NCBI GenBank assembly: GCA_020184695.1
Contig: JAANOX010000140.1
Coordinates: 1-64,000, forward strand
Direction: 5' to 3'
From: Histomonas meleagridis 2922-C6/04-290x
Lineage: Eukaryota > Protista > Parabasalia
Length of the DNA stretch: 64,000 bases
Within the stretch, counting starts at the first letter, position 1, and each line of letters opens with the position of its first letter. Shown piece after piece: positions 1,107 through 64,000 of this stretch. The notes below the pieces were generated by a model. It worked only from the letters and a program-made list of their open reading frames with translations, searched no databases and was not told where the DNA came from. A program made the translations under genes and the position numbers.

Positions 1107-2611
1107 TGGCTTTTGCTTTTGTTGCTTTACAACACTTAGAATTTATTTCAATTTTCATATGGTTTGTGGCGGCATAAAAATAAGGATTTAAAATGAAATT
1201 ATTCCTTGATAAATTCAAAAAAATATGAACATTATTTTAAATTAAATAATCAAGAAATAATATTATTAAAGAATTTTAAATAAAAGTATCATTTCAATTA
1301 ATAGAAAATTTTAAATCTTTTTCAATTTTGTTGAAAACTTATTTATCTTTGATATTTAGATCATATATTAATATACATTGATAATGTTGATATAATTATA
1401 ATAATTTTTTCTAAAATAATAAAGATAATTATTCACCTAGAAAATACGGTTTCTGCTTTGAAAGTTGAAATGTTGGTTAATTTCAAAGCATCGAAAAAGA
1501 GCGGTTTTTGTTTGTGTTTTCCGGCCAATTTATAGAAAAAAAGTGCATTTCTTTATTTTTTTTCAATGAGATTTGTGTACAATTTTGATTCCCATTCAAA
1601 CAAAATTCAGAGCAAGAACGTTACACACCATCTTTTATATGTCATCGTCTTGTTAATGGTCAAAATTTGAGTTAACGGTTGGGTATTTTTTTATTAACCA
1701 AAGATTTCGTTCTTCGCATTCAATTTAGTCTCCATCAAATTGAATCACTTTTTTTCCATATCATTTTATAATCCTATGAAGCCAGATATCTACACAAAAA
1801 AGTGTGTATTTACAAAAACCCTGAGGAAAAGTGCCTTTCGACCGTTAAAAAGGAAGAATCTATAAGATTAAGTTTTTCAGTTCGTCACTCGATTTGATAT
1901 TTACTCATACAATGTACTTCTATGTAATTTGATCAGCATATGAATTGAGTATGTTTGTTTGGGAGATAGGCGGTTTTTGATAACACAAAGAGAGAAACTT
2001 TGAATAAATCTGGATATAATAATATTTTATATTTTAAATAATTATCGAATACATTAAGTTATTTAAAAATATTATAACATTATAATTATAGAATTATACA
2101 AATTTGTTACATCTTTCATATTAAATTTCATGATTATCATTGTCTTCATTTTGCTTCATCTTTAAATTCATAAAAACAACTTTAAATACTGTTGTACTTC
2201 GGGGATACTTGTATTGTTTTTAATGACAAAAGTGTGCACACGTGGCCTGAGTTCTAATGGACTCGTTCAGGGGCTGATTCTGATTCTGTTGGTGATGATT
2301 CATTTAATGTCTTGAAAATTTTAACCATTTTTTGTGATAACCTTTAAAGGGAAGCTTAACTTGTAAAGCTTTAATTATTTTTGGTTTTTGAGGCAGATTC
2401 TCCAATTTTAAACTCTATTTACAGACTTGCTAATTTGAAGTGGATTTATATCTGTTCGTACCCCTTAAGCAAACATAAATATATTTATATAACATTATAA
2501 ATTTCGATTGTTGTTATTAAGGAAAGACTCAATTTTAAATTGTTTTTTCGTTTACATCTCTTTTATTTCCTCAAACAAAAATCAGAAAACAAAACTTATT
2601 CCTTTATACAC

Positions 2612-4862
2612 TTACTTTTTCTTCAAAAGTTCATATGTTTTATCATATGATGATTCGATTTCAACGCAATTTCCCTTTGGAATGTTCACGATTTCGATTG
2701 TTCCGTCTTCTGTTTCTGCTGCAAAATTTGTTTTATCAATTACGCCGATGATTTTATATTTCTTCCCATTGTATACAACTTTATCTTGCGGAAGAAAGCC
2801 CGAGTCAGCGCAGTGCGTGATGTCGATCCAACACTCTCCGACTGCTGTGGCGGCTTTCGTTGGCACGCTGATGCGCCCTGTACAGCAGCTTCGGCTCTGC
2901 TTCAAGCGCTGCGCACTCGTTGTTGTCGTGGTACTCAACATATATTTGCCCTTCGCTGATGCCGCAAACTTCGCAGTGTCGCTCGTGCACCAAAAGTTCA
3001 TCGCCGGGAAGAAGCGTTTGGTTAATGAAATCGTTCGTATCGACGCTAAGTTCAATATTTCTTCCGTCACTTAATTTTTTGACTCTTTTCCCCGGCTTTG
3101 TGATCCTTGCGATAAGTTCATATTTTTCTTTGAAATTTTCTTCTTCGAAATATCCAACGCCAAAACCGTTTTTCATCAAAAATTCAGTGGAAAAAACCGC
3201 CCGTTCCTTACCGTCAACCGTCGAAACTCCCACAAAAAAAGCGGTTTGACTGTTTGCCCTTATCACGTCGCACGGATAAAGGCCAAATTCGGCGTGCGAA
3301 CTTTGCGAGAAATCAACAAAAATCGGCCTCCCGCCGATGTCACTAAAGCAGTCCCCGTAATGCGACATTGACCTGCGTATTTTCATTTCCTCGCTTCCCT
3401 TTATCACGCGCAGCAATTCGCCGTCGGACACGAAGAGAATTATGTGATCGCTGTCCGCGCTGCCGCTGTACACGCCGACGCCAAACGAGTCGCACGAAAC
3501 AACGTCGCCAAGCTCGCAGCCTTTGATTGGCTCGACGTTGTACAGCAAAATGTCTCCGTTTGCGTCAGTTTCTTGTTTCACTGTTACGTTGTTACGCGCA
3601 ATAAGTTTGTGCGCAGCGTGCAGCTGATGACTGTTCGCGCGCGAGCACATGCGAATTCAGATGAGTACCGGATCAAAGCGAGCCGCAGCGCGCACGAGAA
3701 CAGTGCCGCGACCGAGATGCGCGTGCTCAATGACATCGCCCGATCGAAAGTGTGAAATCTTTGCGAGCGCTTTCGCAGACACGTCGAGTTGCAGATCGCC
3801 GCCGCAGCCGAAAGAGAAGTTACGTATGTCAGCGCCGGCGCGCGACTCGAGGCGCCAATCGAAGAGATACGTCCCAATCGATAAAATGTCCGAAAATTTG
3901 ATTTCTTGCGTGTACTCATCGAAGTAACACAACTTACTTCCATCAAATGCTGTCCCAACTATCGTAGCAACGTTATCATTCATATAAATATTTCGTTTTT
4001 GGAGACTGAGAAGTGGTCAATCATTGACGGCGAATTAATGCGAATGTATGAATTTGACGACGGACCAGAAAATGCAATGCTGTAAAGTTCGCCGCACGAA
4101 AGAATAAGAAGTAATTCATCACTGAATACGCCGATTTGTGTAATAGGCCGATGGAACATAGGGAAATCATATGTAAACTGTTCGCGAGCCCCAACGTGCA
4201 TGTGCACAATGTTGTGATACGAGTCAATTCCAATGATTCGCTCATGAGAATTATAAACTTCGCGAACAGAACTACTTAAAAATGATGAAACGAGATACAA
4301 ATCGCCGCATGCAAGTAACTTATTGCCTGCAACTGGCTCTGTGCTGTAGAGGCGATTGTCGCTGAGAAGAAGTATGTATTGAGATGCCGTCGAATGAACT
4401 GATTTGATGGTTTTACCTGTGGGAAGTTTGTACTCTTTCGTGTTTGTAAGTGTAAAATAAACAGTGGCACTGGCCCCAGCTCCAACAAGAAGTGCATGGA
4501 AACACTTATGTCAATAACATTAGTTTGATTAAGGGGAATAATAGTCTCTGAATAGCCTTGGCCACAGACATACACACAACCATCTTGTGTTAAAATCGCA
4601 AATAATTTACTTGAAATGAAACTTTTTGATGAGCTTTGTTTTTTTAATAAGGGGAATGAATAGATTGATATGAATAACTCTTATTTTTGGTAAATTTAGG
4701 TTCGCCATTTAAAAGAATATCACCACTACTTGTTAAAAAAATTTGATATGTTTTTGTTGAAAATCGATCTACAATATCTTTATCACATAGCTCGTCACAT
4801 CTTTTGAATTCTTGCTTTGTTATCTCTTTGACATTTTCTGCTTTTAGTGAGAAAACTTTCAT
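2612..4862 (-). CDS. RCC1/BLIP-II-like beta-propeller plus repeated GxxxGD-x-V modules (left copy, several frameshifts)
   Basis: ORF pieces 4644-4862, 4276-4575, 3980-4300, 3657-3983, 2805-3650 and 2612-3070 concatenate to the near-continuous 776-aa right copy. RCC1-like blades such as VSISSKLFAILTQDGCVYVCGQG. Confidence 0.6.
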
Positions 4863-5068
4863 TCTTCAAATTGGAAAAGTTACACAAAACCGTTTAAAAA
4901 CGTTCTCCAAAAAACAAAAACAAAATTCGCACTTCTATTTTACTAACAAAAAAGTGTTCGCTCAGAAGAATTTGATAAAATTCTTCTTCAATTTCTTAAT
5001 AAGAATTTGATGTATTCTTTAATGTAGTTTGGAAATTGTTTTCGTTAATATTATCATTCTTTGCTATG

Positions 5069-8000
5069 TTACATTTCTTTGTTAACATTCGTTTCTTCCT
5101 TATGTAAAGTTCCTTTTTCTTTACTTTCGATTTCATTACGTAAATTTGTTTCTTCGTTATCATTGTATGAATTTGTTTTGTTATGTATTTCATTCATATT
5201 TGCTATAACATTATTATAATTCGCTTTTTCATTATTTGCATTTGCTTCTTCGCTGTTTGTAATTGCTTTGTGTTTGTTTTCTGTTGTTTCATCTTCACGC
5301 ACTTCATTGGCATTCACTTCTTCTTCGTTTTCTGTTTCATTTTTTGTATTTGTTTCTTTACTGTTAACATTTGCTTTACTATTTACTTCTGTCTCTTCGT
5401 TATATTCAGTTGTTTCTTTACTATGTTCTGTTCTATTTTTTGGTGTTTCATCTTCGTTATTACGCTCTATTTCATCAATAGAATTTGTTTCTTCGCCATT
5501 TTCTTTGTATTTATCTTTTTCATTTTCTACTTCATTCCTTATAATTGTTTCTTCTTTATCATTTGCGTCTCCACTGTTTATGTTTGCTTTCTCATTATTT
5601 GATTTTGTTTCTTCTTTATTTATATCTGCGCTTTCGTTATGTTCTATTTCATTGACTTCTATATCTGTTTCATTGTTTGTTTCTTCACTTTTTACTATGA
5701 TTTCGCTGTTTATTTCGTGAACATTCGCATTGTCATAATTTTCATTTTGTTTCTTCACTATGTTCTGTTTGTTTGTTTACATTTTTAATATTTGCATTAT
5801 CGTTTTCTTCGTTATCCGTTTCATTATTCGAATTTGTATCTGTTTCTTCGTTATGTTCATTTTCCTCTTCACTTACTTCGTTAACATTTACATTATCATT
5901 CGCTTCTTCATTATTTATAATCGCATTATCAGTACTATTCGCCTTCTCTTTGTTTACTGTATCTTCATTTTCGTTTTCTTCTTCGTTATTAATATTATCA
6001 ATGCTTATACTTACATTGTTATTAGCAATATTTGTTTCTTCATTATATTCTGTTTCTTCATTTACATTTGCTTCTTCTTTTACATTTATTTCTTCATTTA
6101 CATTTGCTTCTTCTTTTACATTTATTTCTTCATTTACATTTGCTTCTTCTTTTACATTTATTTCTTCATTTACATTTGTTTCTTCTTTTGCATTTATTTC
6201 TTCATTTACATTTGTTTCTTCTTTTACATTTATTTCTTCATTTACATTTGCTTCTTCTTTTGCATTTATTTCTTCATTTACATTTGTTTCTTCTTTTGCA
6301 TTTATTTCTTCATTTACATTTGCTTCTTCTTTTGCATTTATTTCTTCATTTACATTTGTTTCTTCTTTTACATTTATTTCTTCATTTACATTTGTTTCTT
6401 CTTTTTACATTTATTTCTTCATTTACATTTGTTTCTTCTTTTGCATTTATTTCTTCTTTTTATTTTTTCTTCTTTTACATTTTTTTCTTCATTTACATTT
6501 TGTTTCTTCTTCTTTTACATTTTTTTCTTCATTTTCATTTTTTTCTTCTTTTTCTTTTATTTCTTCATTTACATTTGTTTCTTCTTTTACATTTATTTCT
6601 TCATTTACATTTGTTTCTTCTTTTACATTTATTTCTTCATTTACATTTGCTTCTTCTTTTACATTTATTTCTTCATTTACATTTGTTTCTTCTTTTGCAT
6701 TTATTTCTTCATTTACATTTGTTTCTTCTTTTACATTTATTTCTTCATTTACATTTGTTTCTTCTTTTACATTTATTTCTTCATTTACATTTGTTTCTTC
6801 TTTTGCATTTATTTCTTCATTTACATTTGTTTCTTCTTTTACATTTATTTCTTCATTTACATTTGTTTCTTCTTTTACATTTATTTCTTCATTTACATTT
6901 GCTTCTTCTTTTGCATTTATTTCTTCATTTACATTTGTTTCTTCTTTTACATTTATTTCTTCATTTACATTTGTTTCTTCTTTTACATTTATTTCTTCAT
7001 TTACATTTGCTTCTTCTTTTGCATTTATTTCTTCATTTACATTTGTTTCTTCTTTTACATTTATTTCTTCATTTACATTTGTTTCTTCTTTTGCATTTAT
7101 TTCTTCATTTACATTTGTTTCTTCTTTTGCATTTATTTCTTCATTTACATTTGCTTCTTCTTTTACATTTATTTCTTCATTTACATTTGTTTCTTCTTTT
7201 ACATTTATTTCTTCATTTACATTTGCTTCTTCATTGTGTTCTTTTGTTTCTTCATTTGTATTTGTTTCTTCATTATGTTCTGTTTCTTCACTTGTTTCGT
7301 TGATGTTTATATTTTCAATATTATCCATTTCATTATTTATGTTAACAATAATATTATTAAGAAGTTCAAGATTTGGAATCAAAAATGCTGTTCTCATCAT
7401 TCTTTTCACTACTTTTCCAAATTGTTGTACATCATTTGAATCGTTTCGTCAATTTCGGATGACGTTGGTGAGTGAAACAAATCATTAACTGATGACAAAT
7501 GAAAATTCGATGAAAAAATTCCGTTTTCATTAATTTCGATATTTTTCCCAATTTCGATTTTAAGTTTATCAAATATGAAACTCAAGCAAAGTCTCATCCA
7601 TGAGTTCGGGCGTGAATCGTTATGACCGCCTTTCATTAAAAATATCGTTTTGTCTTCTGCTGCGCATGAATTGTATAATTGTAATGCATGATAAAAAGGA
7701 ATAAAATTATCATCTTCCGAGTGTCCAATGATCGTTGGCGTGTTCGATTTACGAACTGATTCGAGCGGACTAACGTCATAAACATCGAAACCCGCAATTT
7801 TAAGAATGCGACTACGAAGATACCACGTGGCCATGCCTACGAATGCGCGCGGGAAATTAACTGTTGCCGCACCGTCACGAAATAGTTCTGGTAATGAAAA
7901 GAAATGATGAGTCGCTAATTACGCCTGAAAGAAATGGCGACTTAACAAGAAGCGCCGAACTTGCACCCATAGAACGTCCCCATAAAACAAACGACTGAAT

Positions 8001-8411
8001 GTCAAATGTTTGGTTAAGACGTCCCATCAAAAATTCGATGTCTTGTTTTTCGAAATAACCTAAAGAAACATATTCTCCTTCACTATTACCACATCCTGCA
8101 AAATCAAAACAAAACAAATAAATGTCTTTGACGCATATATTTGGTATCAAAAATTGTCCTTCTAACTGACTTGAAACGTTTCCATGAAGATAAATAACAC
8201 ACTTACTACTATTCATCGGATCTGATTCAATACTATGATAAAGTGACCCAACAATTTCTTGGTTTCGTGAATTAACAAAAGAAATTGGAATTCGTAAAAA
8301 ACGTTTGTCTCCTGACTCGAAAACCAATGGAATATCTTCAAGATTATAATGTTGACGTGGTGGACGAATGACGGCGTTGATCGCTATTTGGATCAAGTTT
8401 GTGCTCGCCAT
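5069..8411 (-). CDS. Alpha/beta-hydrolase (ABHD13/17, S9-like) fused to a ~780-aa Glu/Asn-rich repeat tail (left copy, frameshifted)
   Basis: Motifs YLHGN, FDFAGCGNSEG, nucleophile elbow WGRSMG, GHSEDD and GGHN. ORF pieces 7875-8417, 7409-7834, 6489-7409 and 5069-5758 plus intervening sequence join by 1-nt shifts; likely start MASTNL at 8411. Confidence 0.8.
6050..7235 (-). repeat. Coding tandem repeat, 36-bp unit (two 18-bp halves) encoding EE(T/A)NVNEEIN(V/A)K
   Basis: Directly visible TTTACATTTGTTTCTTCTTTTACATTTATTTCTTCA repeats, with a degenerate patch at ~6440-6560. Confidence 0.95.
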
Positions 8412-8579
8412 TTGCACAAAGAGTTGATATTTCTGTGTTGAACGATTAAAAAGTCACTTTTTGGTTAACGGTCCCCATTTTTTAAAATCTTGTAAAAATT
8501 TAATAAAGAAAAACAAATCTTTGATTTATTAATATTAAAATTATATTGAACATTTTATTCAGTAAAATCCTTATCGTTG

Positions 8580-9125
8580 TTATTGTGATAACGCTGAAAA
8601 TTTCCAATTTCCTTCCATTTCTTCAACTGAAACAAAATTTAATGAAAGTGGTTTAATAAATTCTTTAGATATTGTTGGAATAACTTTGTACCCAAAATGA
8701 AGAAGTGCACCTGCGAAAATTCCTTCCATAAAATGTTTATATGCGTTATACCAAAAAATATATTGTTCGCCTGGTGATGATGAACTAACTGAAAGTGAAT
8801 TAAACCAATCTGGCGGAGTGTCATAAGTAAATGTTAATGTTTTGTTAATCGACTTTTGTGAAATTTGATACTTACATTCAATGTCAAATAATGTTTTAGA
8901 GAATATCGTAGAAAGGAAAATACATATCTCTTCTAAGGTAGTGCCTTCCATAGGCATGTTTCGACAAAGTTGTGAAACCATTGCAAAACCTGGATGTTTC
9001 GCAAAATTATAAATATGAAGATTAATATGAATTCGATTGTCTGTAATCCCATCAAACTTTTTTGCAATCTCTCTAACTGCTTCATTAACAAGTAATTGAG
9101 GAAATGGATTTCTTTCTCTTTTCAT
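8580..9125 (-). CDS. TRAPP Bet3-family subunit (Trs33/TRAPPC6-like), left copy intact
   Basis: ~181 aa. GFAMVSQL...LEEICIFLSTIFSKTLF and FMEGIFAGALLHFG resemble the Bet3-family segments G-x-R-L...KFICKDFW and F-x-x-G-x-x-x-GAL-x-x-G. Start at 9125 is preferred over 9152. Confidence 0.5.
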   Translation of the reverse strand: MKRERNPFPQLLVNEAVREIAKKFDGITDNRIHINLHIYNFAKHPGFAMVSQLCRNMPMEGTTLEEICIFLSTIFSKTLFDIECKYQISQKSINKTLTFTYDTPPDWFNSLSVSSSSPGEQYIFWYNAYKHFMEGIFAGALLHFGYKVIPTISKEFIKPLSLNFVSVEEMEGNWKFSALSQ

Positions 9126-9154
9126 ATGAAAAAGTGTCAATAATAATTCCATGA

Positions 9155-9319
9155 AACCGTTAAAATTATCTTTATAAAAAAATCAATTTTTATAAAATAA
9201 TTATCATTATTTTAAACATAATTTTAGTCTCAAAATTTCTTTCATTTAAAGAATATACTTTATTTTAATTTGGAATTAACTTTGTTTTTTGAAGTTAATT
9301 TTTTCTTCATTAAACGGTT
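9155..9319. promoter_or_regulatory. Bidirectional promoter between TRAPP-like gene and VPS16 with two divergent AACGGTT (M3/Myb-type) motifs
   Basis: AACCGTT at 9155-9161 (sense for TRAPP, ~30 nt before its ATG) and AACGGTT at 9313-9319 (sense for VPS16, ~47 nt before its ATG). The same motif lies 26 nt before the RCC1-like ATG (4888-4894). It matches the trichomonad M3 core-promoter consensus. Confidence 0.45.
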
Positions 9320-9365
9320 TCTTCATATAACATTTATATCAAACAAACATTCAGAAAACAACAAA

Positions 9366-11731
9366 ATGTTTGAATCTCTTTTCGACAATTGGATTACAAT
9401 AGGTGATTATAAACTTGAACTTATTAAACTTAGTGATTTTGAAGATTCTGATTATTTACGATCTAACAAACATTATTACTTTTATTGTGGAGGACCAATT
9501 ATTAATTATTCTTCACATGATTCACGATTTTTAAATTTCCTTTCTAATAGTGGTAAACCCATTTCACATCCTATTCAGTTTAAGAGAGCAGAATTTGCGA
9601 ATACGATTTTTGGTTTTCCAGATGGTCATTTATTTTTTTTATCATATGATGGTAATATCAGTATTACAGATACACAAGGGAATATTGTTGATGAGATACC
9701 ATCTCTTAATAATAAAACTATTTTATGTTCACATGTTACAAGTAAAGGTTATGTTTATATTAAAGATGATCATTATCTTAACTGTTACAAAGGACTTATT
9801 AATCCATCGCATTTTTCATATCAATTAATTGTTGATAGTGATCCATGTTTTGTTAGTTTAATTAATGATGATCCATTTACTACAGTCATTGTCACCACGA
9901 ACAATAACATTTACTTAAGTACGCCGAATGGTATTGTTCAACTAAAACATATAAATGAGAAAATCACGAATATTAGTGCGCCATTCAAAGGTAATTACAT
10001 TGGCGTTATTTGCGACACCACAGTATACTTTATTTCGAGCGATGTCAATGATACGTCAGATCCAATAATTCTTTATAATGTTTCGTCACCATTTGGATGG
10101 ATACAAAATAATATATTTATGTATTCGAATGAACGCACATTACAATTAATTATCCCGAAAACTAATTTTCATATTACATTAAATGTGTTTCAAATTCTTG
10201 ACATATTCGAAGACATTGAATACGTTCGAATTTACGCGCGCTCTGGCTGTTATATTCTTCGTCCTGTGCCGACATCGATTATATCATTGACGACAGATCG
10301 ACTTTCATCGTCAATTAAGAAGTTAACAGATTCATATTCATTATATCTCAAGCGGAACATTGAAAGTTATAATTTATTACAAGTGCTTAAAGGGGAATGT
10401 TGAAAATTTAGTTCTTTTTTATTATTAGATGCAGCGCGCGATTGTCTCGACATTGACAACCAAAAAAATATTTGCTCGAGTCTTGCGTGCTACGGCCGCT
10501 ATTCGTATGAATGTAAGAACGTCAAAGAGTACACAGAAACATTACGAAACTTACGATTAATTAACACATTAAATTCTCCTGAATATGGATTTGCGCTTAC
10601 GCCAGACATAATGATAAATCACATTTCAGACGTATTTTCTAGTGTTATGGAATTACATTATTATCAATTAGCTATCGAGTTATGTAAAATATTTCAATTT
10701 GATATCACTAATGTTATTGAGCATTGGTCCATTAATATGTTTTCTAAATTTGGCGACTCAGCACTTAATACGATACTTTCGCGTTGTTCTAAATATGATA
10801 CTATTAATTATTATAAAATCGGTGAATCAGCTAAAAACTTTCACTTAATTTTTCGTACCATTTATACTATTGCGCAAACGTATTAATTTGCCCTAAAGAA
10901 AAGAATTCAATTTATGTATTCATTTGATAGAGAATCCACGTTAAATATGGTATTGCACATATTTGATGGCGATTCAATTATTACATATTTGATGCTACTT
11001 GATAAACAAGAACGCGAAAGATTCGTTGAAAGAATATCCGCAATTTCTTGAACAATATTTATCATATAAGAAATATCAAATTGCGGAAGAAATTGCACAA
11101 AAATCGAACGAACAATCGAAACTTCCAGAAATACAAATTTGCGAAGCCTTATTCGGCCGGTTCTTGCAGTCTTCTTTATAGCTGTGACCATTCGCAGTTT
11201 GGTAAATCAATTTCATCGCTTGAATATTCGGAGAATTTCTTTGATAAAAAGTCGACATTTAATAATATATTAACATCGCATAAGAAATTATTACAAATTG
11301 CGCGTAAATATAAGATAAACGTTGAACAATTTAAAAATGTTACTCCGCGTGAGTTACTTATACATTCCATAATGAATAAAGATGAAAAACTCGAAAAAGA
11401 AATTGTTAAAAGTTTTGGATTTAGTTCCAAAATTGTAACATATAACAAACTTGACACATTTGCCCGGAATAAAATGTGGAACGAACTCGACGAATTTACG
11501 CGTATTCCAAATCCGGAAGTCGGATGGGACATATTTGCGTCGGTTTGTTTGGAGTACAATGAAATTGATCACGCGCTGAAATTCATTTCATTAATTAAAG
11601 ATAAAAAGCGTCAAATGGAAGTGTTTGTTCGTCATGGATTGTTTTCACAAGCAGCAAAAATTGCGCGCGAATTAGGTTTGAATGATTTAGCTAAAGATTA
11701 TGATAAAAAAGGAAAAGCAGCAACTGTATAA
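9366..11731 (+). CDS. VPS16: Vacuolar protein sorting 16 (HOPS/CORVET subunit), left copy frameshifted
   Basis: LLDAARDCLDIDNQKYLLSLACYGR, LRLINTLNSPEYGFALT and LDTFARNKMWNELDEF...GWDIFASVCLEYN..AAKIARE match Vps16_N/Vps16_C signatures. Confidence 0.85.
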
Positions 11732-11814
11732 TAATAATAATAAATTTTTTATGGATCAAAACTTTGTTCTATTTAAATAAAAGAAATTATTAAAATTTTA
11801 TTTTTAATATATTA

Positions 11815-52425: not shown

Positions 52426-52739
52426 ATTAAATGTAACTAAAGATAAATAATTTGAATTTACCAATAAAGAAACAAAATATATTGGAAAAGTTCAATCAAA
52501 TACAACAAAGGTTCTTAACATATAAAAGCTAAAGCCTCTTCATGTACGCGTACATAATTTTGGACCAAGCTCACAAAGTCAGTAAAATATTATGAATTGT
52601 TTTAATTTTTTTAATTTTTGATATAAGTGTTAACATGTAATTTTCTTTATCACTGTTTAAAAAATATTTTCTTTATCACATTCATCAAAATGACTTTTGA
52701 TATGAAAATGCACGTTAACTTTTCTTTATTATTTTTCAA

Positions 52740-53815
52740 ATGTATTCAGATTTCCCAAAATATAGCTTTAAGTTACAATATTTTGATGAACAATCAGGTC
52801 TTACTCTTTATTATATTTTGATATATTATACAGAAAGAACAGAAATTGAAATTTATGATGTTAAAAAAATCGACGAGATGTTTTTACGAAAAAAACTCCA
52901 ATTCACAATATTAAAAATGAGTGACCTTTATATTGGAAGTAAAATTCTTATTAATGGACGTCAATATGAAATCATTGATTTTTTTCAGATGAGTTTACAC
53001 GAAAATCTTTAAGTGAAAAAATGCAACATACACTTGGAATAATCAAATCAGGTTATTCACGATATTTAGGCGAAGTTCTAGATTCTATATATTCTAATAG
53101 TCTTTCAGTATCACAACTTCAATTTGGTTCTATTTCTAAAGAGATTGGAATTTCATTATTAAAAGAACATCGTAAAGAACAAACATTTGAAAATCTTTTG
53201 AATAGTATTACGAAAGATTCTATTATTGCTATTGATATTGTTGGTAATAATTCTATTTTAAAATGGAAAGAAATTATTGAAAGGAAATTTTGGAATGAAA
53301 TTTGTTATGGATCAGAAACATTAACATCATCAACATATGAAATAGAAATTATATTTAATCAACGAAATCTTCAAATAAAATCACTTATTGATGGCACTAC
53401 AACATTATGTCTTATTAAACCACATGCAATCAAATCAGGAGTTTCAGGTAAAATAATTCAACAAATTCTTAAAAATGGATTTGAAATTGTTGGCGCGATG
53501 ATGACGACATTTAATATTGAAGAAGCGAGCGAATTCTTTGAGATATATCGAGGCGTTGTTGATAATTATTATGAAATTTCGAGAGATTTAGCGTCAGGTC
53601 CAATTTTAGCGCTTGAATTATATAAAGAAGATGCAGTTAATTCATTACGAGAAATATGTGGGCCACGAGATGTTTCGATTGCGAAAGCAATTCGTCCACA
53701 ATCAATTCGTGCACTTTATGGGATAAATAACATTCAGAATGCAGTACATTGTACGGATCTTAAAGAAGAATCACAAATTGAATGCGAATTCTTTTTTAAT
53801 CTTTTAAGTAATTAA
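52740..53815 (+). CDS. NME7: NME7/NDPK7, right copy (frameshifts within DM10)
   Basis: 52740-53012 plus 53021-53815; the NDK-A/NDK-B junction that is broken on the left is continuous here. Confidence 0.9.
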
Positions 53816-53902
53816 TAATATATTAAAAAAATAAAAATTTTTAATAATTTCTTTTATTTAAATAGAACAAAGTTTTTGATCCATAAAAATTTATTATTAT
53901 TA

Positions 53903-56266
53903 TTATACAGTTGCTGCTTTTTCCTTTTTATCATAATCTTTAGCTAAATCATTCAAACCTAATTCGCGCGCAATTTTTTTGCTGCTTGTGAAAAACAATC
54001 CATGACGAACAAACACTTCCATTTGACGCTTTTTATCTTTAATTAATGAAATGAATTTCAGCGCGTGATCAATTTCATTGTACTCCAAACAAACCGACGC
54101 AAATATGTCCCATCCGACTTCCGGATTTGGAATACGCGTAAATTCGTCGAGTTCGTTCCACATTTTATTCCGTGCAAATGTGTCAAGTTTCGTATATGTT
54201 ACAATTTTGGAACTAAATCCAAAACTTTTAACAATTTCTTTTTCGAGTTTTTCATCTTTATTCATTATGGAATGTATAAGTAACTCACGCGGAGTAACAT
54301 TTTTAAATTGTTCAACGTTTATCTTATATTTACGCGCAATTTGTAATAATTTCTTATGCGATGTTAATATATTATTAAATGTCGACTTTTTATCAAAGAA
54401 ATTCTCCGAATATTCAAGCGATGAAATTGATTTACCAAACTGCGAATGGTCACAGCTATAAAGAAGACTGCAAGAACCGGCCGAATAAGGCTTCGCAAAT
54501 TTGTATTTCTGGAAGTTTCGATTGTTCGTTCGATTTTGTGCAATTTCTTCCGCAATTTGATATTTCTTATATGATAAATATTGTTCAAGAAATTGCGGAT
54601 ATTCTTCAACGAATCTTTCGCGTTCTTGTTTATCAAGTAGCATCAAATATGTAATAATTGAATCGCCATCAAATATGTGCAATACCATATTTAACGTGGA
54701 TTCTCTATCAAATGAATACATAAATTGAATTCTTTCTTTAGGCAAATTAATACGTTGCGCAATAGTATAAATGGTACGAAAATTAAGTGAAAGTTTTTTA
54801 GCTGATTCACCGATTTTATAATAATTAATAGTATCATATTTAGAACAACGCGAAAGTATCGTATTAAGTGCTGAGTCGCCAAATTTAGAAAACATATTAA
54901 TGGACCAATGCTCAATAACATTAGTGATATCAAATTGAAATATTTTACATAACTCGATAGCTAATTGATAATAATGTAATTCCATAACACTAGAAAAATA
55001 CGTCTGAAATGTGATTTATCATTATGTCTGGCGTAAGCGCAAATCCATATTCAGGAGAATTTAATGTGTTAATTAATCGTAAGTTTCGTAATGTTTCTGT
55101 GTACTCTTTGACGTTCTTACATTCATACGAATAGCGGCCGTAGCACGCAAGACTGAGCAAATATTTTTGGTTGTCAATGTCGAGACAATCGCGCGCTGCA
55201 TCTAATAATAAAAGAACTAAATTTTCAACATTCCCTTTAAGCACTTGTAATAAATTATAACTTTCAATGTTCCGCTTGAGATATAATGAATATGAATCTG
55301 TTAACTTCTTAATTGACGATGAAAGTCGATCTGTCGTCAATGATATAATCGATGTCGGCACAGGACGAAGAATATAACAACCAGAGCGCGCGTAAATTCG
55401 AACGTATTCAATGTCTTCGAATATGTCAAGAATTTGAAACACATTTAATGTAATATGAAAATTAGTTTTCGGGATAATTAATTGTAATGTGCGTTCATTC
55501 GAATACATAAAGATATTATTTTGTATCCATCCAAATGGTGATGAAACATTATAAAGAATTATTGGATCTGACGTATCGTTGACATCGCTCGAAATAAAGT
55601 ATACTGTGGTGTCGCAAATAACGCCAATGTAATTACCTTTGAATGGCGCACTAATATTCGTGATTTTCTCATTAATATGTTTTAGTTGAACAATACCATT
55701 CGGCGTACTTAAGTAAATGTTATTGTTCGTGGTGACAATGACTGTAGTAAATGGATCATCATTAATTAAACTAACAAAACATGGATCACTATCAACAATT
55801 AATTGATAAAAAAAAAATGCGATGGATTAATAAGTCCTTTGTAACAGTTAAGATAATGATCATCTTTAATATAAACATAACCTTTACTTGTAACATCTTG
55901 AACATAAAATAGTTTTATTATTAAGAGATGGTATCTCATCAACAATATTCCCTTGTGTATCTGTAATACTGATATTACCATCATATGATAAAAAAAATAA
56001 ATGACCATCTGGAAAACCAAAAATCGTATTCGCAAATTCTGCTCTCTTAAACTGAATAGGATGTGAAATGGGTTTACCACTATTAGAAAGGAAATTTAAA
56101 AAAATCGTGAATCATGTGAAGAATAATTAATAATTGGTCCTCCACAATAAAAGTAATAATGTTTGTTAGATCGTAAATAATCAGAATCTTCAAAATCACT
56201 AAGTTTAATAAGTTCAAGTTTATAATCACCTATTGTAATCCAATTGTCGAAAAGAGATTCAAACAT
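53903..56266 (-). CDS. VPS16: VPS16, right copy (frameshifted at different positions)
   Basis: Mirror of 9366-11731. Confidence 0.85.
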
Positions 56267-56508
56267 TTTGTTGTTTTCTGAATGTTTGTTTGATATAAAT
56301 GTTATATGAAGAAACCGTTTAATGAAGAAAAAATTAACTTCAAAAAACAAAGTTAATTCCAAATTAAAATAAAGTATATTCTTTAAATGAAAGAAATTTT
56401 GAGACTAAAATTATGTTTAAAATAATGATAATTATTTTATAAAAATTGATTTTTTTATAAAGATAATTTTAACGGTTTCATGGAATTATTTTATTGACAC
56501 TTTTTCAA

Positions 56509-57000
56509 ATGAAAAGAGAAAGAAATCCATTTCCTCAATTACTTGTTAATGAAGCAGTTAGAGAGATTGCAAAAAAGTTTGATGGGATTACAGATAATCG
56601 AATTCATATTAATCTTCATATTTATAATTTTGCGAAACATCCAGGTTTTGCAATGGTTTCACAACTTTGTCGAAACATGCCTATGGAAGGCACCACCTTA
56701 GAAGAAATATGTATTTTCCTTTCTACGATATTCTCTAAAACATTATTTGACATTGAATGTAAGTATCAAATTTCACAAAAGTCGATTAACAAAACATTAA
56801 CATTTACTTATGACACCCCACCAGATTGGTTTAATTCACTTTCAGTTAATTCATCATCACCAGGCGAACAATATATTTTTTGGTATAACGCATATAAACA
56901 TTTTATGGAAGGAATTTTTGCAGGTGCACTTCTTCATTTTGGGTACAAAGTTATTCCAACGATATCTAAAGAATTTATTAGGCCACTTTCATTAAATTAG
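56509..57000 (+). CDS. TRAPP Bet3-family subunit, right copy truncated by ~18 C-terminal codons
   Basis: Ends at a TAG located at the ~311-bp deletion junction (56998-57000). Confidence 0.45.
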   Translation: MKRERNPFPQLLVNEAVREIAKKFDGITDNRIHINLHIYNFAKHPGFAMVSQLCRNMPMEGTTLEEICIFLSTIFSKTLFDIECKYQISQKSINKTLTFTYDTPPDWFNSLSVNSSSPGEQYIFWYNAYKHFMEGIFAGALLHFGYKVIPTISKEFIRPLSLN

Positions 57001-60000
57001 TTTTCGAGTCAGGAGACAAACGTTTTTTACGAATTCCAATTTCTTTTGTTAATTCACGAAATCAAGAAATTGTTGGGTCACTTTATCATAGTATTGAATT
57101 AGATCCGATGAATAGTAGTAAGTGTGTTATTTATCTTCATGGAAACGTTTCAAGTCAGTTAGAAGGACAATTTTTGATACCAAATATATGCGTCAAAGAT
57201 ATTTATTTGTTTTGTTTTGATTTTGCAGGATGTGGTAATAGTGAAGGAGAATATGTTTCTTTAGGTTATTTTCGAAAAACAAGACATCGAATTTTTGATG
57301 GGACGTCTTAACCAAACATTTGACATTCAGTCGTTTGTTTTATGGGGACGTTCTATGGGTGCAAGTTCGGCGCTTCTTGTTAAGTCGCCATTTCTTTCAG
57401 GCGTAATTAGCGACTCATCATTTCTTTCATTACCAGAACTATTTCGTGACGTTGCGGCAACAGTTAATTTCCCGCGCGCATTCGTAGGCATGGCCACGTG
57501 GTATCTTCGTAGTCGCATTCTTAAAATTGCGGGTTTCGATGTTTATGACGTTAGTCCGCTCGAATCAGTTCGTAAATCGAACACGCCAACGATCATTGGA
57601 CACTCGGAAGATGATAATTTTATTCCTTTTTTTATCATGCATTACAATTATACAATTCATGCGCAGCAGAAGACAAAACGATATTTTTAATGAAAGGCGG
57701 TCATAACGATTCACGCCCGAACTCATGGATGAGACTTTGCTTGAGTTTCATATTTGATAAACTTAAAATCGAAATTGGGAAAAATATCGAAATTAATGAA
57801 AACGGAATTTTTTCATCGAATTTTCATTTGTCATCAGTTAATGATTTGTTTCACTCACCAACGTCATCCGAAATTGACGAAACGATTCAAATGATGTACA
57901 ACAATTTGGAAAGTAGTGAAAAGAATGATGAGAACAGCATTTTGATTCCAAATCTTGAACTTCTTAATAATATTATTGTTAACATAAATAATGAAATGGA
58001 TAATATTGAAAATATAAACATCAACGAAACAAGTGAAGAAACAGAACATAATGAAGAAACAAATACAAATGAAGAAACAAAAGAACACAATGAAGAAACA
58101 AATGTAAATAAAGAAACAAATGTAAATGAAGAAACAGAAGATAACAAAGGAATAAATGCAAAAGAAGAAACAAATGTAAATGAAGAAACAAAAGAACATA
58201 ATAAAGAAACAAATGTAAATGAAGAAACAAAAGAACATAATAAAGAAACAAATGTAAATGAAGAAACAAAAGAACATAATAAAGAAACAAATGTAAATGA
58301 AGAAACAGAAGATAACAAAGGAATAAATGCAAAAGAAGAAACAAATGTAAATGAAGAAATAAATGTAAAAGAAGAAGCAAATGTAAATGAAGAAATAAAT
58401 GTAAAAGAAGAAACAAATGTAAATGAAGAAATAAATGTAAAAGAAGAAACAAATGTAAATGAAGAAATAAATGTAAAAAGAAGAAACAAATGTAAATAAA
58501 AGAAGAAGCAAATGTAAATGAAGAAATAAATGTAAAAGAAGAAACAAATGTAAATGAAGAAATAAATGTAAAAGAAGAAACAAATGTAAATGAAGAAATA
58601 AATGCAAAAGAAGAAACAAATGTAAATGAAGAAATAAATGTAAAAGAAGAAGCAAATGTAAATGAAGAAATAAATGCAAAAGAAGAAACAAATGTAAATG
58701 AAGAAATAAATGTAAAAGAAGAAGCAAATGTAAATGAAGAAATAAATGCAAAAGAAGAAACAAATGTAAATGAAGAAATAAATGTAAAAGAAGAAACAAA
58801 TGTAAATGAAGAAATAAATGTAAAAGAAGAAACAAATGTAAATGAAGAAATAAATGCAAAAGAAGAAACAAATGTAAATGAAGAAATAAATGTAAAAAAA
58901 AGAAAAAAAAGTAAATGAAAAAAAAAATAAAAAAGAAAAAAAAAAAAGAAATGAAGAAACAAATGAAAAAGAAGAAGCAAATGTAAATGAAGAAATAAAT
59001 GCAAAAGAAGAAACAAATGTAAATGAAGAAATAAATGTAAAAGAAGAAACAAATGTAAATGAAGAAATAAATGTAAAAGAAGAAACAAATGTAAATGAAG
59101 AAATAAATGTAAAAGAAGAAGCAAATGTAAATGAAGAAATAAATGTAAAAGAAGAAGCAAATGTAAATGAAGAAATAAATGTAAAAGAAGAAGCAAATGT
59201 AAATGAAGAAACAACAGAACACAACAAAAATACAAAAGCAAATGAAGAAACAGAATATAATGAAGAAACAAATATTGCTAATAACAATGTAAGTATAAGC
59301 ATTGATAATATTAATAACGAAGAAGAAAACGAAAATGAAGATACATTAAACAAAGAGAAGGCGAATAGTACTGATAATGCGATTATAAATAATGAAGAAG
59401 CGAATGATAATGTAAATGTTAACGAAGTAAGTGAAGAGGAAAATGAACATAACGAAGAAACAGATACAAATTCGAATAATGAAACGGATAACGAAGAAAA
59501 CGATAATGCAAATATTAAAAATGTAAACAAACAAACAGAACATAGTGAAGAAACAAATGAAAATTATGACAATGCGAATGTTCACGAAATAAACAGCGAA
59601 ATCATAGTAAAAAGTGAAGAAACAAACAATGAAACAGATATAGAAGTCAATGAAATAGAACATAACGAAAGCGCAGATATAAATAAAGAAGAAACAAAAT
59701 CAAATAATGAGAAAGCAAACATAAACAGTGGAGACGCAAATGATAAAGAAGAAACAATTATAAGGAATGAAGTAGAAAATGAAAAAGATAAATACAAAGA
59801 AAATGGCGAAGAAACAAATTCTATTGATGAAATAGAGCGTAATAACGAAGATGAAACACCAAAAAATAGAACAGAACATAGTAAAGAAACAACTGAATAT
59901 AACGAAGAGACAGAAGTAAATAGTAAAGCAAATGTTAACAGTAAAGAAACAAATACAAAAAATGAAACAGAAAACGAAGAAGAAGTGAATGCCAATGAAG

Positions 60001-60233
60001 TGCGTGAAGATGAAACAACAGAAAACAAACACAAAGCAATTACAAACAGCGAAGAAGCAAATGCAAATAATGAAAAAGCGAATTATAATAATGTTATAGC
60101 AAATATGAATGAAATACATAACAAAACAAATTCATACAATGATAACGAAGAAACAAATTTACGTAATGAAATCGAAAGTAAAGAAAAAGGAACTTTACAT
60201 AAAGAAGAAACTGATGTTAACAAAGAAATGTAA
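57001..60233 (+). pseudogene. Alpha/beta-hydrolase with Glu/Asn tail, right copy lacking promoter, start and first ~29 codons
   Basis: Begins abruptly at ...VFESGDKR; left 8325-8635 is missing; catalytic motifs are otherwise present. Confidence 0.55.
58075..59210 (+). repeat. Coding tandem repeat EE(T/A)NVNEEIN(V/A)K plus extra unit types (EETKEHNK, EETEDNKGINAK)
   Basis: Directly visible; composition differs from the left copy. Confidence 0.95.
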
Positions 60234-60439
60234 CATAGCAAAGAATGATAATATTAACGAAAACAATTTCCAAACTACATTAAAGAATACATCAAATTCT
60301 TATTAAGAAATTGAAGAAGAATTTTATCAAATTCTTCTGAGCGAACACTTTTTTGTTAGTAAAATAGAAGTGCGAATTTTGTTTTTGTTTTTTGGAGAAC
60401 GTTTTTAAACGGTTTTGTGTAACTTTTCCAATTTGAAGA

Positions 60440-62819
60440 ATGAAAGTTTTCTCACTAAAAGCAGAAAATGTCAAAGAGATAACAAAGCAAGAATTCAAAA
60501 GATGTGACGAGCTATGTGATAAAGATATTGTAGATCGATTTTCAACAAAAACATATCAAATTTTTTTAACAAGTAGTGGTGATATTCTTTTAAATGGCGA
60601 ACCTAAATTTACCAAAAATAAGAGTTATTCATATCAATCTATTCATTCCCTTATTAAAAACAAAGCCATCAAAAAAGTTTCAATTTCAAGTAAATTATTT
60701 GCGATTTTAACACAAGATGGTTGTGTGTATGTCTGTGGCCAAGGCTATTCAAATACTATTATTCCCCTTAATCAAACTAATGTTATTGACATAAGTGTTT
60801 CCAAAAATGCACTTCTTGTTGGAGCTGGGGCCAGTGCCACTGTTTATTTTACACTTACAAACACGAAAGAGTACAAACTTCCCACAGGTAAAACCATCAA
60901 ATCAGTTCATTCGACGGCATCTCAATACATACTTCTTCTCAGCGACAATCGCCTCTACAGCACAGAGCCAGTTGCAGGCAATAAGTTACTTGCATGCGGC
61001 GATTTGTATCTCGTTTCATCATTTTTAAGTAGTTCTGTTCGCGAAGTTTATAATTCTCATGAGCGAATCATTGGAATTGACTCGTATCACAACATTGTGC
61101 ACATGCATGTTGGGGCTCGCGAACAGTTTACATATGATTTCCCTATGTTCCATCGGCCTATTACACAAATCGGCGTATTCAGTGATGAATTACTTCTTAT
61201 TCTTTCGTGCGGCGAACTTTACAGCATTGCATTTTCTGGTCCGTCGTCAAATTCATACATTCGCATTAATTCGCCGTCAATGATTGACCACTTCTCAGTC
61301 TCCAAAAACGAAATATTTATATTCACAAGCGAAACAGTTCCAACGCCCGCGCTCACTGTGTATGCGCGTGGCTACGATTGGTTTACAGTCGACACAGCGC
61401 AACTCGAACGCATTGGGTTCGAAAGCGGCGATCGCGTTCGAGCTCCGAATGATAACGTTGCTACGATAGTTGGGACAGCATTTGATGGAAGTAAGTTGTG
61501 TTACTTCGATGAGTACACGCAAGAAATCAAATTTTCGGACATTTTATCGATTGGGACGTATCTCTTCGATTGGCGCCTCGAGTCGCGCGCCGGCGCTGAC
61601 ATACGTAACTTCTCTTTCGGCTGCGGCGGCGATCTGCAACTCGACGTGTCTGCGAAAGCGCTCGCAAAGATTTCACACTTTCGATCGGGCGATGTCATTG
61701 AGCACGCGCATCTCGGTCGCGGCACTGTTCTCGGCGCGCGCTGCGGCTCGCTTTGGATCCGGTACTCATCTGGAATTCGCATGTGCTCGCGCGCGAACAG
61801 TAATCAGCTGCACACTGCGCACAAACTTATTGCGCGTAACAACGTAACAGTGAAACAAGAAACAGACGCAAACGGAGACATTTTGCTGTACAACGTCGAG
61901 CCAATCAAAGGCTATGAGCTTGGCGACGTTGTTTCGTGCGACTCGTTTGGCGTCGGCGTGTACAGCGGCAGCGCGGACAGCGATCACATAATTCGCTTCG
62001 TGTCCGACGGCGAATTGCTGCGCGTGATAAAGGGAAGCGAGGAAATGAAAATACGCAGGTCAATGTCGCATTACGGGGACTGCTTTAGTGACATCGGCGG
62101 GAGGCCGATTTTTGTTGATTTCTCGCAAAGTTCGCACGCCGAATTTGGCCTTTATCCGTGCGACGTGATAAGGGCAAACAGTCAAACCGCTTTCTGTGCG
62201 GGAGTTTCGACGGTTGACGGTAAGGAACGGGCCGCTTTTTCCCCTGAATTTCGGATGAAAACCGGTTTTGGCGTTGGATATTTCGAAGAAGAAAATTTCA
62301 AAGAAAAATATGAACTTATCGCAAGGATCACAAAGCCGGGGAAAAGAGTCAAAAAATTAAGTGACGGAAGAAATATTGAACTTAGCGTCGATACGAACGA
62401 TTTCATTAACCAAACGCTTCTTCCCGGCGATGAACTTTTGGTGCACGAGCGACACTGCGAAGTTTGCGGCATCAGCGAAGGGCAAATATATGTTGAGTAC
62501 CACGACAACAACGAGTGCGCAGCGCTTGAAGCAGAGCCGAAGCTGCTGTACAGGCGCATCAGCGTGCCAACGAAAGCCGCCACAGCAGTCGGAGAGTGTT
62601 GGATCGACATCACGCACTGCGCTGACTCGGGCTTTCTTCCGCAAGATAAAGTTGTATACAATGGGAAGAAATATAAAATCATCGGCGTAATTGATAAAAA
62701 CAAATTTTGCAGCAGAAACAGAAGACGGAACAATCGAAATCGTGAACATTCCAAAGGGAAATTGCGTTGAAATCGAATCATCATATGATAAAACATATGA
62801 ACTTTTGAAGAAAAAGTAA
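60440..62819 (+). CDS. RCC1-like propeller plus repeated GxxxGD-x-V modules (~790 aa), right copy nearly intact
   Basis: 776-aa ORF with one extra A near 62698; the C-terminus matching the left copy (...YELLKKK) ends at TAA 62817-62819. Confidence 0.65.
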
Positions 62820-64000
62820 GTGTATAAAGGAATAAGTTTTGTTTTCTGATTTTTGTTTGAGGAAATAAAAGAGATGTAAACGAAAAAACAATTTAAAATT
62901 GAGTCTTTCCTTAATAACAACAATCGAAATTTATAATGTTATATAAATATATTTATGTTTGCTTAAGGGGTACGAACAGATATAAATCCACTTCAAATTA
63001 GCAAGTCTGTAAATAGAGTTTAAAATTGGAGAATCTGCCTCAAAAACCAAAAATAATTAAAGCTTTACAAGTTAAGCTTCCCTTTAAAGGTTATCACAAA
63101 AAATGGTTAAAATTTTCAAGACATTAAATGAATCATCACCAACAGAATCAGAATCAGCCCCTGAACGAGTCCATTAGAACTCAGGCCACGTGTGCACACT
63201 TTTTGTCATTAAAAACAATACAAGTATCCCCGAAGTACAACAGTATTTAAAGTTGTTTTTATGAATTTAAAGATGAAGCAAAATGAAGACAATGATAATT
63301 TTTTCATGAAATTTAATATGAAAGATGTTTTTTTTTTAACAAATTTGTATAATTCTATAATTATAATGTTATAATATTTTTAAATAACTTAATGTATTCG
63401 ATAATTATTTAAAATATAAAATATTATTATATCCAGATTTATTCAAAGTTTCTCTCTTTGTGTTATCAAAAACCGCCTATCTCCCAAACAAACATACTCA
63501 ATTCATATGCTGATCAAATTACATAGAAGTACATTGTATGAGTAAATATCAAATCGAGTGACGAACTGAAAACTTAATCTTATAGATTCTTCCTTTTTAA
63601 CGGTCGAAAGGCACTTTTCCCTCAAGGTTTTTTGTAAATACACACTTTTTGTGTAGATATCTGGCTTCATAGGATTATAAAATGATATGGAAAAAGTGAT
63701 TCAATTTGATGGAGACTAAATTGAATGCGAAGAACGAAATCTTTGGTTAATAAAAATACCCAACCGTTAACTCAAATTTTGACCATTAACAAGACGATGA
63801 CATATAAAAGATGGTGTGTAACGTTCTTGCTCTGAATTTTGTTTGAATGGGAATCAAAATTGTACACAAATCTCATTGAAAAAAAATAAAGAAATGCACT
63901 TTTTCTATAAATTGGCCGGAAAACACAAACAAAAACCGCTCTTTTTCGATGCTTTGAAATTAACCAACATTTCAACTTTCAAAGCAGAAACCGTATTTTC

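What the first reader, a model, noticed from the sequence alone, without database searches (positions are those of the whole stretch)
1440..64000. Giant (>=27.5 kb per arm) inverted duplication around a single-gene 7-kb spacer
Eleven genes and a satellite array are mirrored around one BEACH gene, and the arms are near-identical yet measurably diverged. If real, this is a chromosomal quasi-palindrome of the type produced by fold-back or inverted amplification, and it would double the dosage of a block of trafficking genes. The alternative is a haplotype-fusion or amplification-chimera assembly artefact.
Basis: partly seen in the sequence, partly recalled or inferred. Interest (0 to 1): 0.8.

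Follow-up and report, generated by a model that had tools for sequence, protein, structure and literature searches.

The report
Real 65-kb palindrome in Histomonas genome
In the poultry parasite Histomonas meleagridis, a block of about a dozen genes is present twice, as mirror-image copies on either side of one single-copy BEACH gene, and short-read data show this is real rather than an assembly mistake, although most of the small differences between the copies are sequencing errors.

Summary
The window is contig JAANOX010000140.1 of Histomonas meleagridis (65,440 nt), and the whole contig is one palindrome:
- left arm: 1-29466
- spacer: 29467-36504, holding one 2212-aa BEACH ORF
- right arm: 36505-65440

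Both ends of the contig fall at homologous positions.

- **Junctions:** one 7098-nt contig built from short reads equals window 29437-36534. It crosses both arm/spacer junctions. A second strain's run and a third DNA run also cross both.
- **Depth:** the arm beside the spacer has twice the word depth of the spacer (1070 v 532; 1200-1414 v 597; about 12 v 6). The spacer sits at the genome baseline (513-539).

The claim of "measurable divergence" is mostly error. 104 of the 175 differences outside the tandem arrays are homopolymer length errors (4v5, 5v7). They break ORFs, and the reads contradict them.

The real differences are 39 clean SNPs, enriched for synonymous changes (P=3e-6), and four gene-breaking deletions of 124-310 nt. 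All lie in 3-17 kb of the arm, and the last 1.4 kb at the contig ends differ further; the inner 12.5 kb is identical. Depth was measured only on the 4 kb next to the spacer.

This is a new example of a known kind: a fold-back-type inverted duplication, probably kept alike by arm-to-arm conversion. The scan has unchecked notes of other inverted duplications in this genome.

The parts
1..29466 (.). Left arm of the palindrome; it begins at the first base of the contig
29467..36504 (.). Single-copy spacer, 7038 nt
   Evidence: for the boundaries. In one search, X1 contig of 7098 nt equals 29437-36534 at depth 531.7, against a genome baseline of 513-539.
36505..64000 (.). Right arm; it continues to contig position 65440, outside the window
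29693..36331 (-). BEACH-domain gene, 2212-aa uninterrupted ORF, the only gene in the spacer; transcribed
   Evidence: PF02138 1.8e-24, PF14844; the best relatives are only 25-37% identical. RNA contig of X3 over 29643-31499.
29467..29510 (+). Decayed homology at the left end of the spacer (core 29485-29507). It is either the diverged inner edge of the arm or the short inverted repeat that seeded a fold-back.
   Evidence: 18 of 23 bases match at nearly the same offset from the boundary, and 8 of 10 match right at the boundary. Not significant as a free local alignment (score 21 v 19.6 +/- 2.7).
36461..36504 (-). Partner of the decayed homology, at the right end of the spacer (core 36461-36483)
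20412..23593 (.). 102-nt tandem array, 31.1 copies, left arm
42368..45257 (.). Mirror 102-nt array, 28.2 copies. It differs from the left array by five unit-sized indels and holds two N (42708, 42715).
19693..20352 (+). Rab-type GTPase, intact copy, ending in the prenylation motif CC
   Evidence: the exact protein is also on a separate public Logan contig.
45300..45976 (-). Rab copy in the right arm, broken in the assembly by +1 A and +2 T in homopolymers. The frame is restored after a stop, which marks these as consensus errors.
8326..8635 (.). 310 nt present only in the left arm. In the right arm (about 56997) the deletion removes the 3' end of a 190-aa ORF and the 5' end of an alpha/beta-hydrolase gene.
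   Evidence: The other strain's contig has the segment.
14636..14829 (.). 194 nt present only in the left arm. The right-arm deletion (about 50983) removes the start of the 212-aa ORF 14694-15332.
49405..49535 (.). 128 nt present only in the right arm. The left-arm deletion (16275) breaks the SH3-domain gene, which has a weak BAR match.
61323..61446 (.). 124 nt present only in the right arm. The left-arm deletion (3981) breaks the GC-rich 776-aa ORF 60440-62770.
53021..53815 (+). NDK7-like nucleoside diphosphate kinase, right-arm copy
   Evidence: the cluster mate is named Histomonas meleagridis and the best named relative is Tritrichomonas foetus, 45% identical.
9270..11731 (+). Vps16-like gene, split in the assembly by frame errors
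   Evidence: PF04840 on both arm copies

Best explanation
**What it is (shown).** This is a real chromosomal inverted duplication in Histomonas meleagridis. Two arms of about 29 kb lie head to head around a single-copy 7.0-kb spacer that holds one BEACH gene. The short-read graph leads from both ends of the spacer only into the arm. The arm next to the spacer is at two copies per genome equivalent and the spacer at one. Both sequenced strains have it.

**How it arose (inferred).** The layout matches a fold-back inverted duplication:
1. A break occurred beside the present spacer.
2. The resected end folded back on a short imperfect inverted repeat; the remains of that repeat would be the decayed 45 nt at each spacer end.
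3. DNA synthesis copied the neighbouring block outwards, leaving the loop as a normal-copy spacer.

**How it is kept (inferred).** Arm-to-arm gene conversion has since kept the copies alike in patches. The inner 12.5 kb has no real difference. Real SNPs sit in patches further out, next to four deletions, and are commonest in the last 1.4 kb.

**Consequence (partly shown).** Dosage is doubled for genes intact in both copies (Rab, Vps16-like, NDK7-like and others). One copy of four or five genes carries a frame-destroying deletion. Which physical arm carries which deletion is not settled, because the assembled arms look like phase-switched mixtures of the two real copies.
For: **Junctions.**
- X1 contig of 7098 nt (depth 531.7) equals window 29437-36534. 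It lies on the + strand from 29437 and its last 40 nt lie on the - strand at 29437-29476. The tool reports this as an 'opposite strands' joint.
- In X2, a 4630-nt contig crosses the left junction and a 381-nt contig carries the right one.
- In X8, a 335-nt contig has 253 nt of arm and then letters equal to the reverse complement of the right spacer end.

**Depth.** Arm contigs have depth 1070 (X1), 1200-1414 (X2) and about 12 (X8). The spacer has 532, 597 and about 6. Unrelated 7-16 kb contigs of X1 have 513-539.

**Errors.** The arm with the longer homopolymer has the broken ORF. Reads leave out those extra letters (table 4).

**Real differences.**
- 39 clean SNPs: 20 synonymous, 15 non-synonymous, 4 non-coding. 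The expected synonymous share is 0.21, so P=3e-6. Genes intact in both copies have 6 synonymous and 0 non-synonymous.
- No SNP in 17-29.47 kb, against 28.6 expected at the outer rate (P=4e-13).
- The other strain's independent assembly (WSYJ01000014.1) follows one arm or the other in long runs. It carries the undeleted form at all four sites together with that form's neighbouring SNP alleles.

**Extent.** The palindrome reaches both contig ends. In the other strain the sequence runs on past that point into unique DNA.

**Comparison.** Fold-back duplications in humans have normal-copy spacers of 766-70,466 nt, with short inverted homology at the spacer edge (PMC3907307).
Against: - Depth was measured only for 25.5-29.4 kb of the arm. 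Nothing was measured for the outer 17 kb, where all the real differences lie.
- The DNA runs come from the cultures that were assembled, and the two strains share one clonal ancestor, so no independent isolate was examined.
- Logan contigs drop rare variants, so a minority arrangement would not be seen.
- The test for right-arm-specific words around the 310-nt deletion was inconclusive: share 0.44-0.50, against 0.26 expected from shared words alone.
- The inner-boundary homology is not significant as a free local alignment.
- I could not see whether the other strain's 465-kb contig holds the second arm.
- That contig has a private frame-breaking 212-nt deletion, so some deletions in these assemblies may be artefacts.
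- Fold-back, conversion and any effect of dosage are inferred, not shown.
Confidence: 0.85

Rival explanations
1. Only the inner part of the arms, about 12.5 kb (17-29.47 kb), is truly duplicated. The outer 17 kb would be one locus with two alleles, or two cell lineages, which the assembler attached to both ends of the palindrome.
For: All real SNPs and deletions lie in 0-17 kb and none lie in the inner part. Depth was measured only on the inner part. The assembled arms and the other strain's copy are mosaics of two haplotypes. The genome paper lists 2933 'heterozygous' SNPs.
Against: - Both arms end at the same homologous base, where the other strain's contig runs on into unique sequence. That fits a repeat boundary and does not fit alleles, which would stay homologous.
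- 2933 such SNPs in 43 Mb is far too few for general heterozygosity of 0.3-2%.
- No break or third branch is seen at about 17 kb in either assembly.
Confidence: 0.1
2. The whole palindrome is an assembly artefact: fused haplotypes, a fold-back nanopore read, or an amplification chimera.
For: The whole contig is the palindrome. It comes from a Flye --meta nanopore assembly polished with short reads mapped under default long-read settings, and it carries about one homopolymer error per 450 nt.
Against: - Contigs from short reads carry both junctions at full baseline depth in two samples.
- The arm is at twice the spacer's depth.
- A fold-back read has no 7-kb spacer.
- The two copies differ by selection-shaped SNPs.
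Confidence: 0.02
3. It is a separate palindromic molecule, a linear amplicon or minichromosome of the Leishmania or Tetrahymena rDNA type, and not part of a chromosome.
For: The contig stands alone and is symmetric from end to end.
Against: - The spacer is at the genome baseline, not amplified.
- The contig ends carry no telomere-like repeat and cut through a RING-finger ORF.
- In the other strain the same arm lies inside a 465-kb contig and continues into unique genes.
Confidence: 0.03

Closest known systems
Fold-back inverted duplications with a normal-copy spacer (human constitutional cases, PMC3907307; yeast foldback inversions, PMC10622511)
   Same: - Two inverted copies flank a spacer that keeps normal copy number.
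- The 7.0-kb spacer lies within the reported range of 766-70,466 nt.
- There is imperfect inverted homology at the spacer edges.
   Different: - Those events are recent and lie next to a terminal deletion, a translocation or a ring. Here at least one outer flank is ordinary unique DNA and the other was not seen.
- The copies here have had time to diverge in patches.
- The structure is fixed in a clonal protist culture.
Large gene-bearing palindromes kept alike by arm-to-arm gene conversion (primate X and Y chromosome palindromes; from my own knowledge)
   Same: Arms of tens of kb are more than 99% alike around a unique spacer. Identity comes in patches, the edges are more diverged, and genes are present in two copies.
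   Different: A different lineage, with no sign of a specialised gene class. Conversion is inferred from one genome only, and conservation in other species is untested.
Palindromic amplicons (Leishmania linear amplicons, Tetrahymena rDNA palindrome; from my own knowledge)
   Same: An inverted duplication seeded at short inverted repeats around a non-palindromic centre.
   Different: Not amplified, no telomeres at the ends, and a centre of 7 kb where the Tetrahymena centre is tens of bases.

Membership tests
Assembly artefact (false duplication or fold-back chimera) | The duplicated arms share single-copy depth, so each has about half the spacer's depth | tested here: not met
   arm 1070 v spacer 532 (X1); 1200-1414 v 597 (X2); about 12 v about 6 (X8). 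Baseline is 513-539.
Assembly artefact (false duplication or fold-back chimera) | One junction is missing from independent read data | tested here: not met
   one 7098-nt short-read contig carries both junctions. X2 and X8 also cross both.
Fold-back inverted duplication | Inverted copies separated by a spacer of normal copy number | tested here: met
Fold-back inverted duplication | Short inverted homology between the spacer end and the start of the duplication | tested here: inconclusive
   8 of 10 bases match at the boundary and 18 of 23 in a core at the same offset. The free local alignment is no better than shuffles.
Fold-back inverted duplication | The distal end is healed by a telomere, a translocation or a ring | not testable with these tools
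   One outer flank is unique DNA in the other strain. The other flank was not reached.
Gene-converting palindrome | Long arms more than 99% alike around a unique spacer | tested here: met
   with homopolymer errors set aside, about 0.3% SNPs at 3-17 kb and none at 17-29.47 kb.
Gene-converting palindrome | Identity is kept by conversion, so the arms are older than they look | tested here: inconclusive
   SNP density is uneven (P=4e-13). About 1.9% of columns mismatch in the outermost 1.4 kb. The inner edge is decayed. No second species or isolate was available to date the duplication.
Extrachromosomal palindromic amplicon | Copy number above the genome baseline, and telomeres at both ends | tested here: not met

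The most novel reading that the evidence does not exclude
This contig may be the clearest case of a general habit of the Histomonas genome. The published '20% duplicated' fraction would consist largely of spacer-containing inverted duplications, made by fold-back repair and then kept alike by arm-to-arm conversion while one copy of each gene decays. That would be a distinct mode of genome growth in parabasalids. It would also explain the reported 'heterozygous' SNPs as differences between copies.
Probability: 0.25. Interest if true: 0.6.

Novelty: new member of a known kind. Interest (0 to 1): 0.35.

Why it matters
- **For users of this genome:** contig JAANOX010000140.1 is a true two-copy region. 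Its gene models are damaged by about one homopolymer error per 450 nt, and the two arms are not correctly phased. Gene counts, variant calls and the 'heterozygous SNPs' in this region need that correction.
- **For biology:** this is a documented large palindrome in a parabasalid with copy number supported by reads. It shows signs of patchwise homogenisation and of decay in one copy. The genome may hold many such structures. The duplication doubles a Rab, a Vps16-like gene and other genes beside a single BEACH gene, but no effect of that dosage is shown.

Tried and rejected
**Searches that found nothing**
- tRNA scan and Rfam scan: nothing in the window.
- Exact-sequence look-up of three ORFs and of the 255-aa ORF next to the junction: not on record.
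- Homologue search with that 255-aa ORF: no hit at all, so it gave no way into the other strain's spacer.

**Attempts that stalled**
- I tried to walk inward along the other strain's contig WSYJ01000014.1. No called genes lie in the inner 10 kb, so I could not see whether that contig holds the spacer and a second arm.
- Single 'places' for three proteins there are not evidence of one copy. The collection's gene calls are sparse; for example the intact Rab of this contig is not on record for it.
- The word-share test for right-arm-specific sequence at the 310-nt deletion was inconclusive.

**Ideas dropped**
- Counting substitutions on homopolymer-compressed sequence misplaced sites. I replaced it with a block classification.
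- 'Reciprocal gene loss between the arms' looked attractive. I dropped it as a firm claim once the three-way comparison showed long alternating runs. That pattern fits phase switching in assembly as well as it fits real mosaics.
Full report
**1. The observation**

An inverted-repeat search and a minus-strand self-BLAST show a colinear chain. Window 1440-29476 matches the reverse complement of 64000-36495 in five blocks at 96.6-98.8% identity. A global alignment gives 26,750 matches, 271 mismatch columns and 136 indel events.

Both arms carry a 102-nt array and an 18/36-nt coding repeat. Exact identity stops at 29466 / 36505, which leaves a spacer of 29467-36504. The spacer holds one 2212-aa ORF on the - strand with BEACH and PH_BEACH domains. 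The ORF is very divergent: its best relatives are 25-37% identical, and Trichomonas vaginalis is among the named ones.

**2. Source and full extent**

A homologue search returned the window's own NDK protein on a contig of 65,440 nt. The record is JAANOX010000140.1 of GCA_020184695.1, and the window is its first 64,000 nt. JAANOX is one of the two Histomonas meleagridis genome projects of PMC8529796. The cluster mate of the NDK protein is named H. meleagridis.

The last 1440 nt of the contig are the reverse complement of window 1-1440, with 1404 matches, 27 mismatches and 23 gap columns. The right end is 5 nt longer. The whole contig is therefore the palindrome, and it ends at homologous positions inside a RING-finger ORF.

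The assembly was made with Flye --meta on nanopore reads. It was then polished by three rounds of racon with short reads mapped by minimap2 at default settings.

**3. Real or artefact**

I laid Logan contigs of three DNA runs and one RNA run on 25500-31499 (6000 letters).

*Junctions.* In X1, a single 7098-nt contig (depth 531.7) matches 29437-31499 with its first 2063 nt. Its last 40 nt lie on the opposite strand at 29437-29476. Its length equals window 29437-36534, so it spans the entire spacer and runs 30 nt (k-1) into the identical arm at both ends.
- In X2, a 4630-nt contig crosses the left junction and a 381-nt contig carries the right one.
- In X8, a 335-nt contig has 253 nt of arm, followed by letters that equal the reverse complement of the right spacer end.

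*Depth.*

| Run | Arm | Spacer |
|---|---|---|
| X1 | 1070 | 532 |
| X2 | 1200-1414 | 597-609 |
| X8 | about 12 | about 6 |

Four unrelated 7-16 kb contigs of X1 that touched the stretch by chance have depths of 513-539. So the spacer is at baseline and the arm at twice baseline.

*Limits.* Contigs give mean word depth. The arm was measured only from 25.5 to 29.4 kb. The runs come from the cultures that were assembled.

**4. What the differences between the arms are**

*Homopolymer errors.* Of 124 small indels, most are homopolymer runs of 5 v 4 or 7 v 5. The arm with the longer run is the one with the broken ORF.
- The left Rab copy is intact and ends in KGKCC.
- The right Rab copy has +1 A and then +2 T, which puts a stop in between before the frame is restored.
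- The exact left-arm Rab protein is also on a separate public Logan contig.
- Reads leave out the extra letters of the left arm at 26364, 26378 and 26597 (X2 and RNA), and at 26840 to 28717 (X8). At 27203-27213 the reads carry the right-arm letters.

Sorting the differences outside the tandem arrays into blocks gives 104 homopolymer-only blocks, 43 clean SNPs, 24 complex blocks and 4 large indels.

*Real SNPs.* After removing the boundary sites and the two SNPs at 27.2 kb, which lie in a stretch where the reads side with the right arm, 39 SNPs remain. All lie between 3.1 and 17 kb.
- 20 are synonymous, 15 non-synonymous and 4 non-coding. The expected synonymous share is 0.21, giving P=3e-6.
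- Genes intact in both copies (Vps16-like, NDK) have 6 synonymous and 0 non-synonymous.
- Genes with a deleted copy have more non-synonymous changes.

Errors do not respect codon positions, so two real sequences exist.

*Distribution.* The inner 9.3 kb of non-repeat sequence has none, where 28.6 are expected at the outer rate (P=4e-13). About 1.9% of columns mismatch in the outermost 1.4 kb.

**5. The large indels**

Four clean deletions each break a gene in one copy:

| Size | Deleted in | Position | Effect |
|---|---|---|---|
| 124 nt | left arm | 3981 | breaks the 776-aa ORF |
| 128 nt | left arm | 16275 | breaks the SH3 gene |
| 310 nt | right arm | about 56997 | removes the 3' end of a 190-aa ORF and the 5' end of a hydrolase gene |
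| 194 nt | right arm | about 50983 | removes the start of a 212-aa ORF |

**6. The other strain's assembly**

The NDK gene of the other strain lies on WSYJ01000014.1, a contig of 465,037 nt. I read 32.5 kb of it.
- It matches both arms from arm position 26354 outward to the exact point where the JAANOX contig ends. It then continues for 7.3 kb into unique DNA that includes a large WD40/ArfGAP gene. At least one outer flank is therefore ordinary chromosome.
- It carries the undeleted form at all four sites.
- At 57 sites where the arms differ it follows the left arm 36 times and the right arm 21 times, in long runs of up to 16 sites.
- Each deletion sits on an arm segment that also carries the non-WSYJ alleles at a neighbouring SNP.

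Deletions and SNPs therefore belong to the same local haplotype, and two independent assemblies recover that haplotype.

The alternating runs also mean that the long-range phase of the assembled arms is not reliable. One real copy may carry all four deletions.

WSYJ has a private frame-breaking 212-nt deletion in the Vps16-like gene. This warns that some deletions in these assemblies could be artefacts.

**7. How it probably arose and is kept**

The layout has doubled inverted copies, a normal-copy spacer of a few kb, and imperfect inverted homology at the spacer edges: 8 of 10 bases at the boundary and an 18-of-23 core at the same offset. This is the layout described for fold-back inverted duplications (PMC3907307).

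The patchy identity, the decayed inner edge and the more diverged outer edge fit later arm-to-arm conversion. These steps are inferred. A two-step history, or template switching during replication, would fit as well.

**8. Rivals**

| Rival | Main evidence | Probability |
|---|---|---|
| Full artefact | Excluded for the junctions and the inner arm | 0.02 |
| Free amplicon | Spacer at baseline depth; other strain's contig continues past the arm | 0.03 |
| Outer 17 kb is allelic, not duplicated | Both arms end at one homologous base where the other strain runs on, which fits a repeat boundary | 0.1 |

The third rival stays open because no depth was measured on the outer 17 kb.

**9. Novelty**

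The genome paper reports 20% duplication but does not mention palindromes. Large palindromes and fold-back duplications are well known elsewhere, so this is a new member of a known kind.

First-stage notes of this scan list many other inverted duplications around unique cores in this genome. These are unchecked and are a lead for a survey.

Noticed in passing
both arms; e.g. window 26840, 26859, 26933, 26972, 28681, 28717, 45419, 45445: The assembly over-calls homopolymers in a regular way (true 4 written as 5, true 5 written as 7). There are about 104 such sites in the two arms, roughly one per 450 nt. They cluster by region in one arm or the other and split many ORFs, so gene models on this contig are unreliable.
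   Followed up: yes
window 20412-23593 and 42368-45257: A 102-nt tandem array lies between the Rab gene and a large unknown gene: 31.1 copies in the left arm and 28.2 in the right. The two arrays differ by five unit-sized indels. Two isolated N (42708, 42715) lie in the right copy.
   Followed up: partly
window 5760-7439 (mirror 57887-59530): A 559-aa ORF is built largely of a 36-nt (12-residue) tandem repeat, about 34 copies. It has no Pfam match. Most of the raw 'substitutions' between the arms fall in this repeat.
   Followed up: no
window 9687-9897 and 55730-55943; L003:12804-12805: The other strain's contig lacks 212 nt of the Vps16-like coding sequence that both arms of this contig have. 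The gap is not a multiple of three. It is either a deletion specific to that strain or copy, or an assembly error there.
   Followed up: partly
window 60440-62770: A 776-aa ORF with about 40% G+C sits in a region of about 25% G+C. It has no Pfam match and is intact only in the right arm. In the other strain's assembly it is split into 298-aa and 329-aa calls.
   Followed up: no
window 1-210 (- strand): The contig begins inside a RING-finger ORF (..CPLC..CDHKFC..CPICKR), so the outer edge of the duplication cuts a gene.
   Followed up: partly
window 28697-29464 (- strand): The 255-aa ORF next to the spacer has no Pfam match and no homologue at all in the 5.8-billion-protein search. Arm identity ends just upstream of its start codon.
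   Followed up: partly
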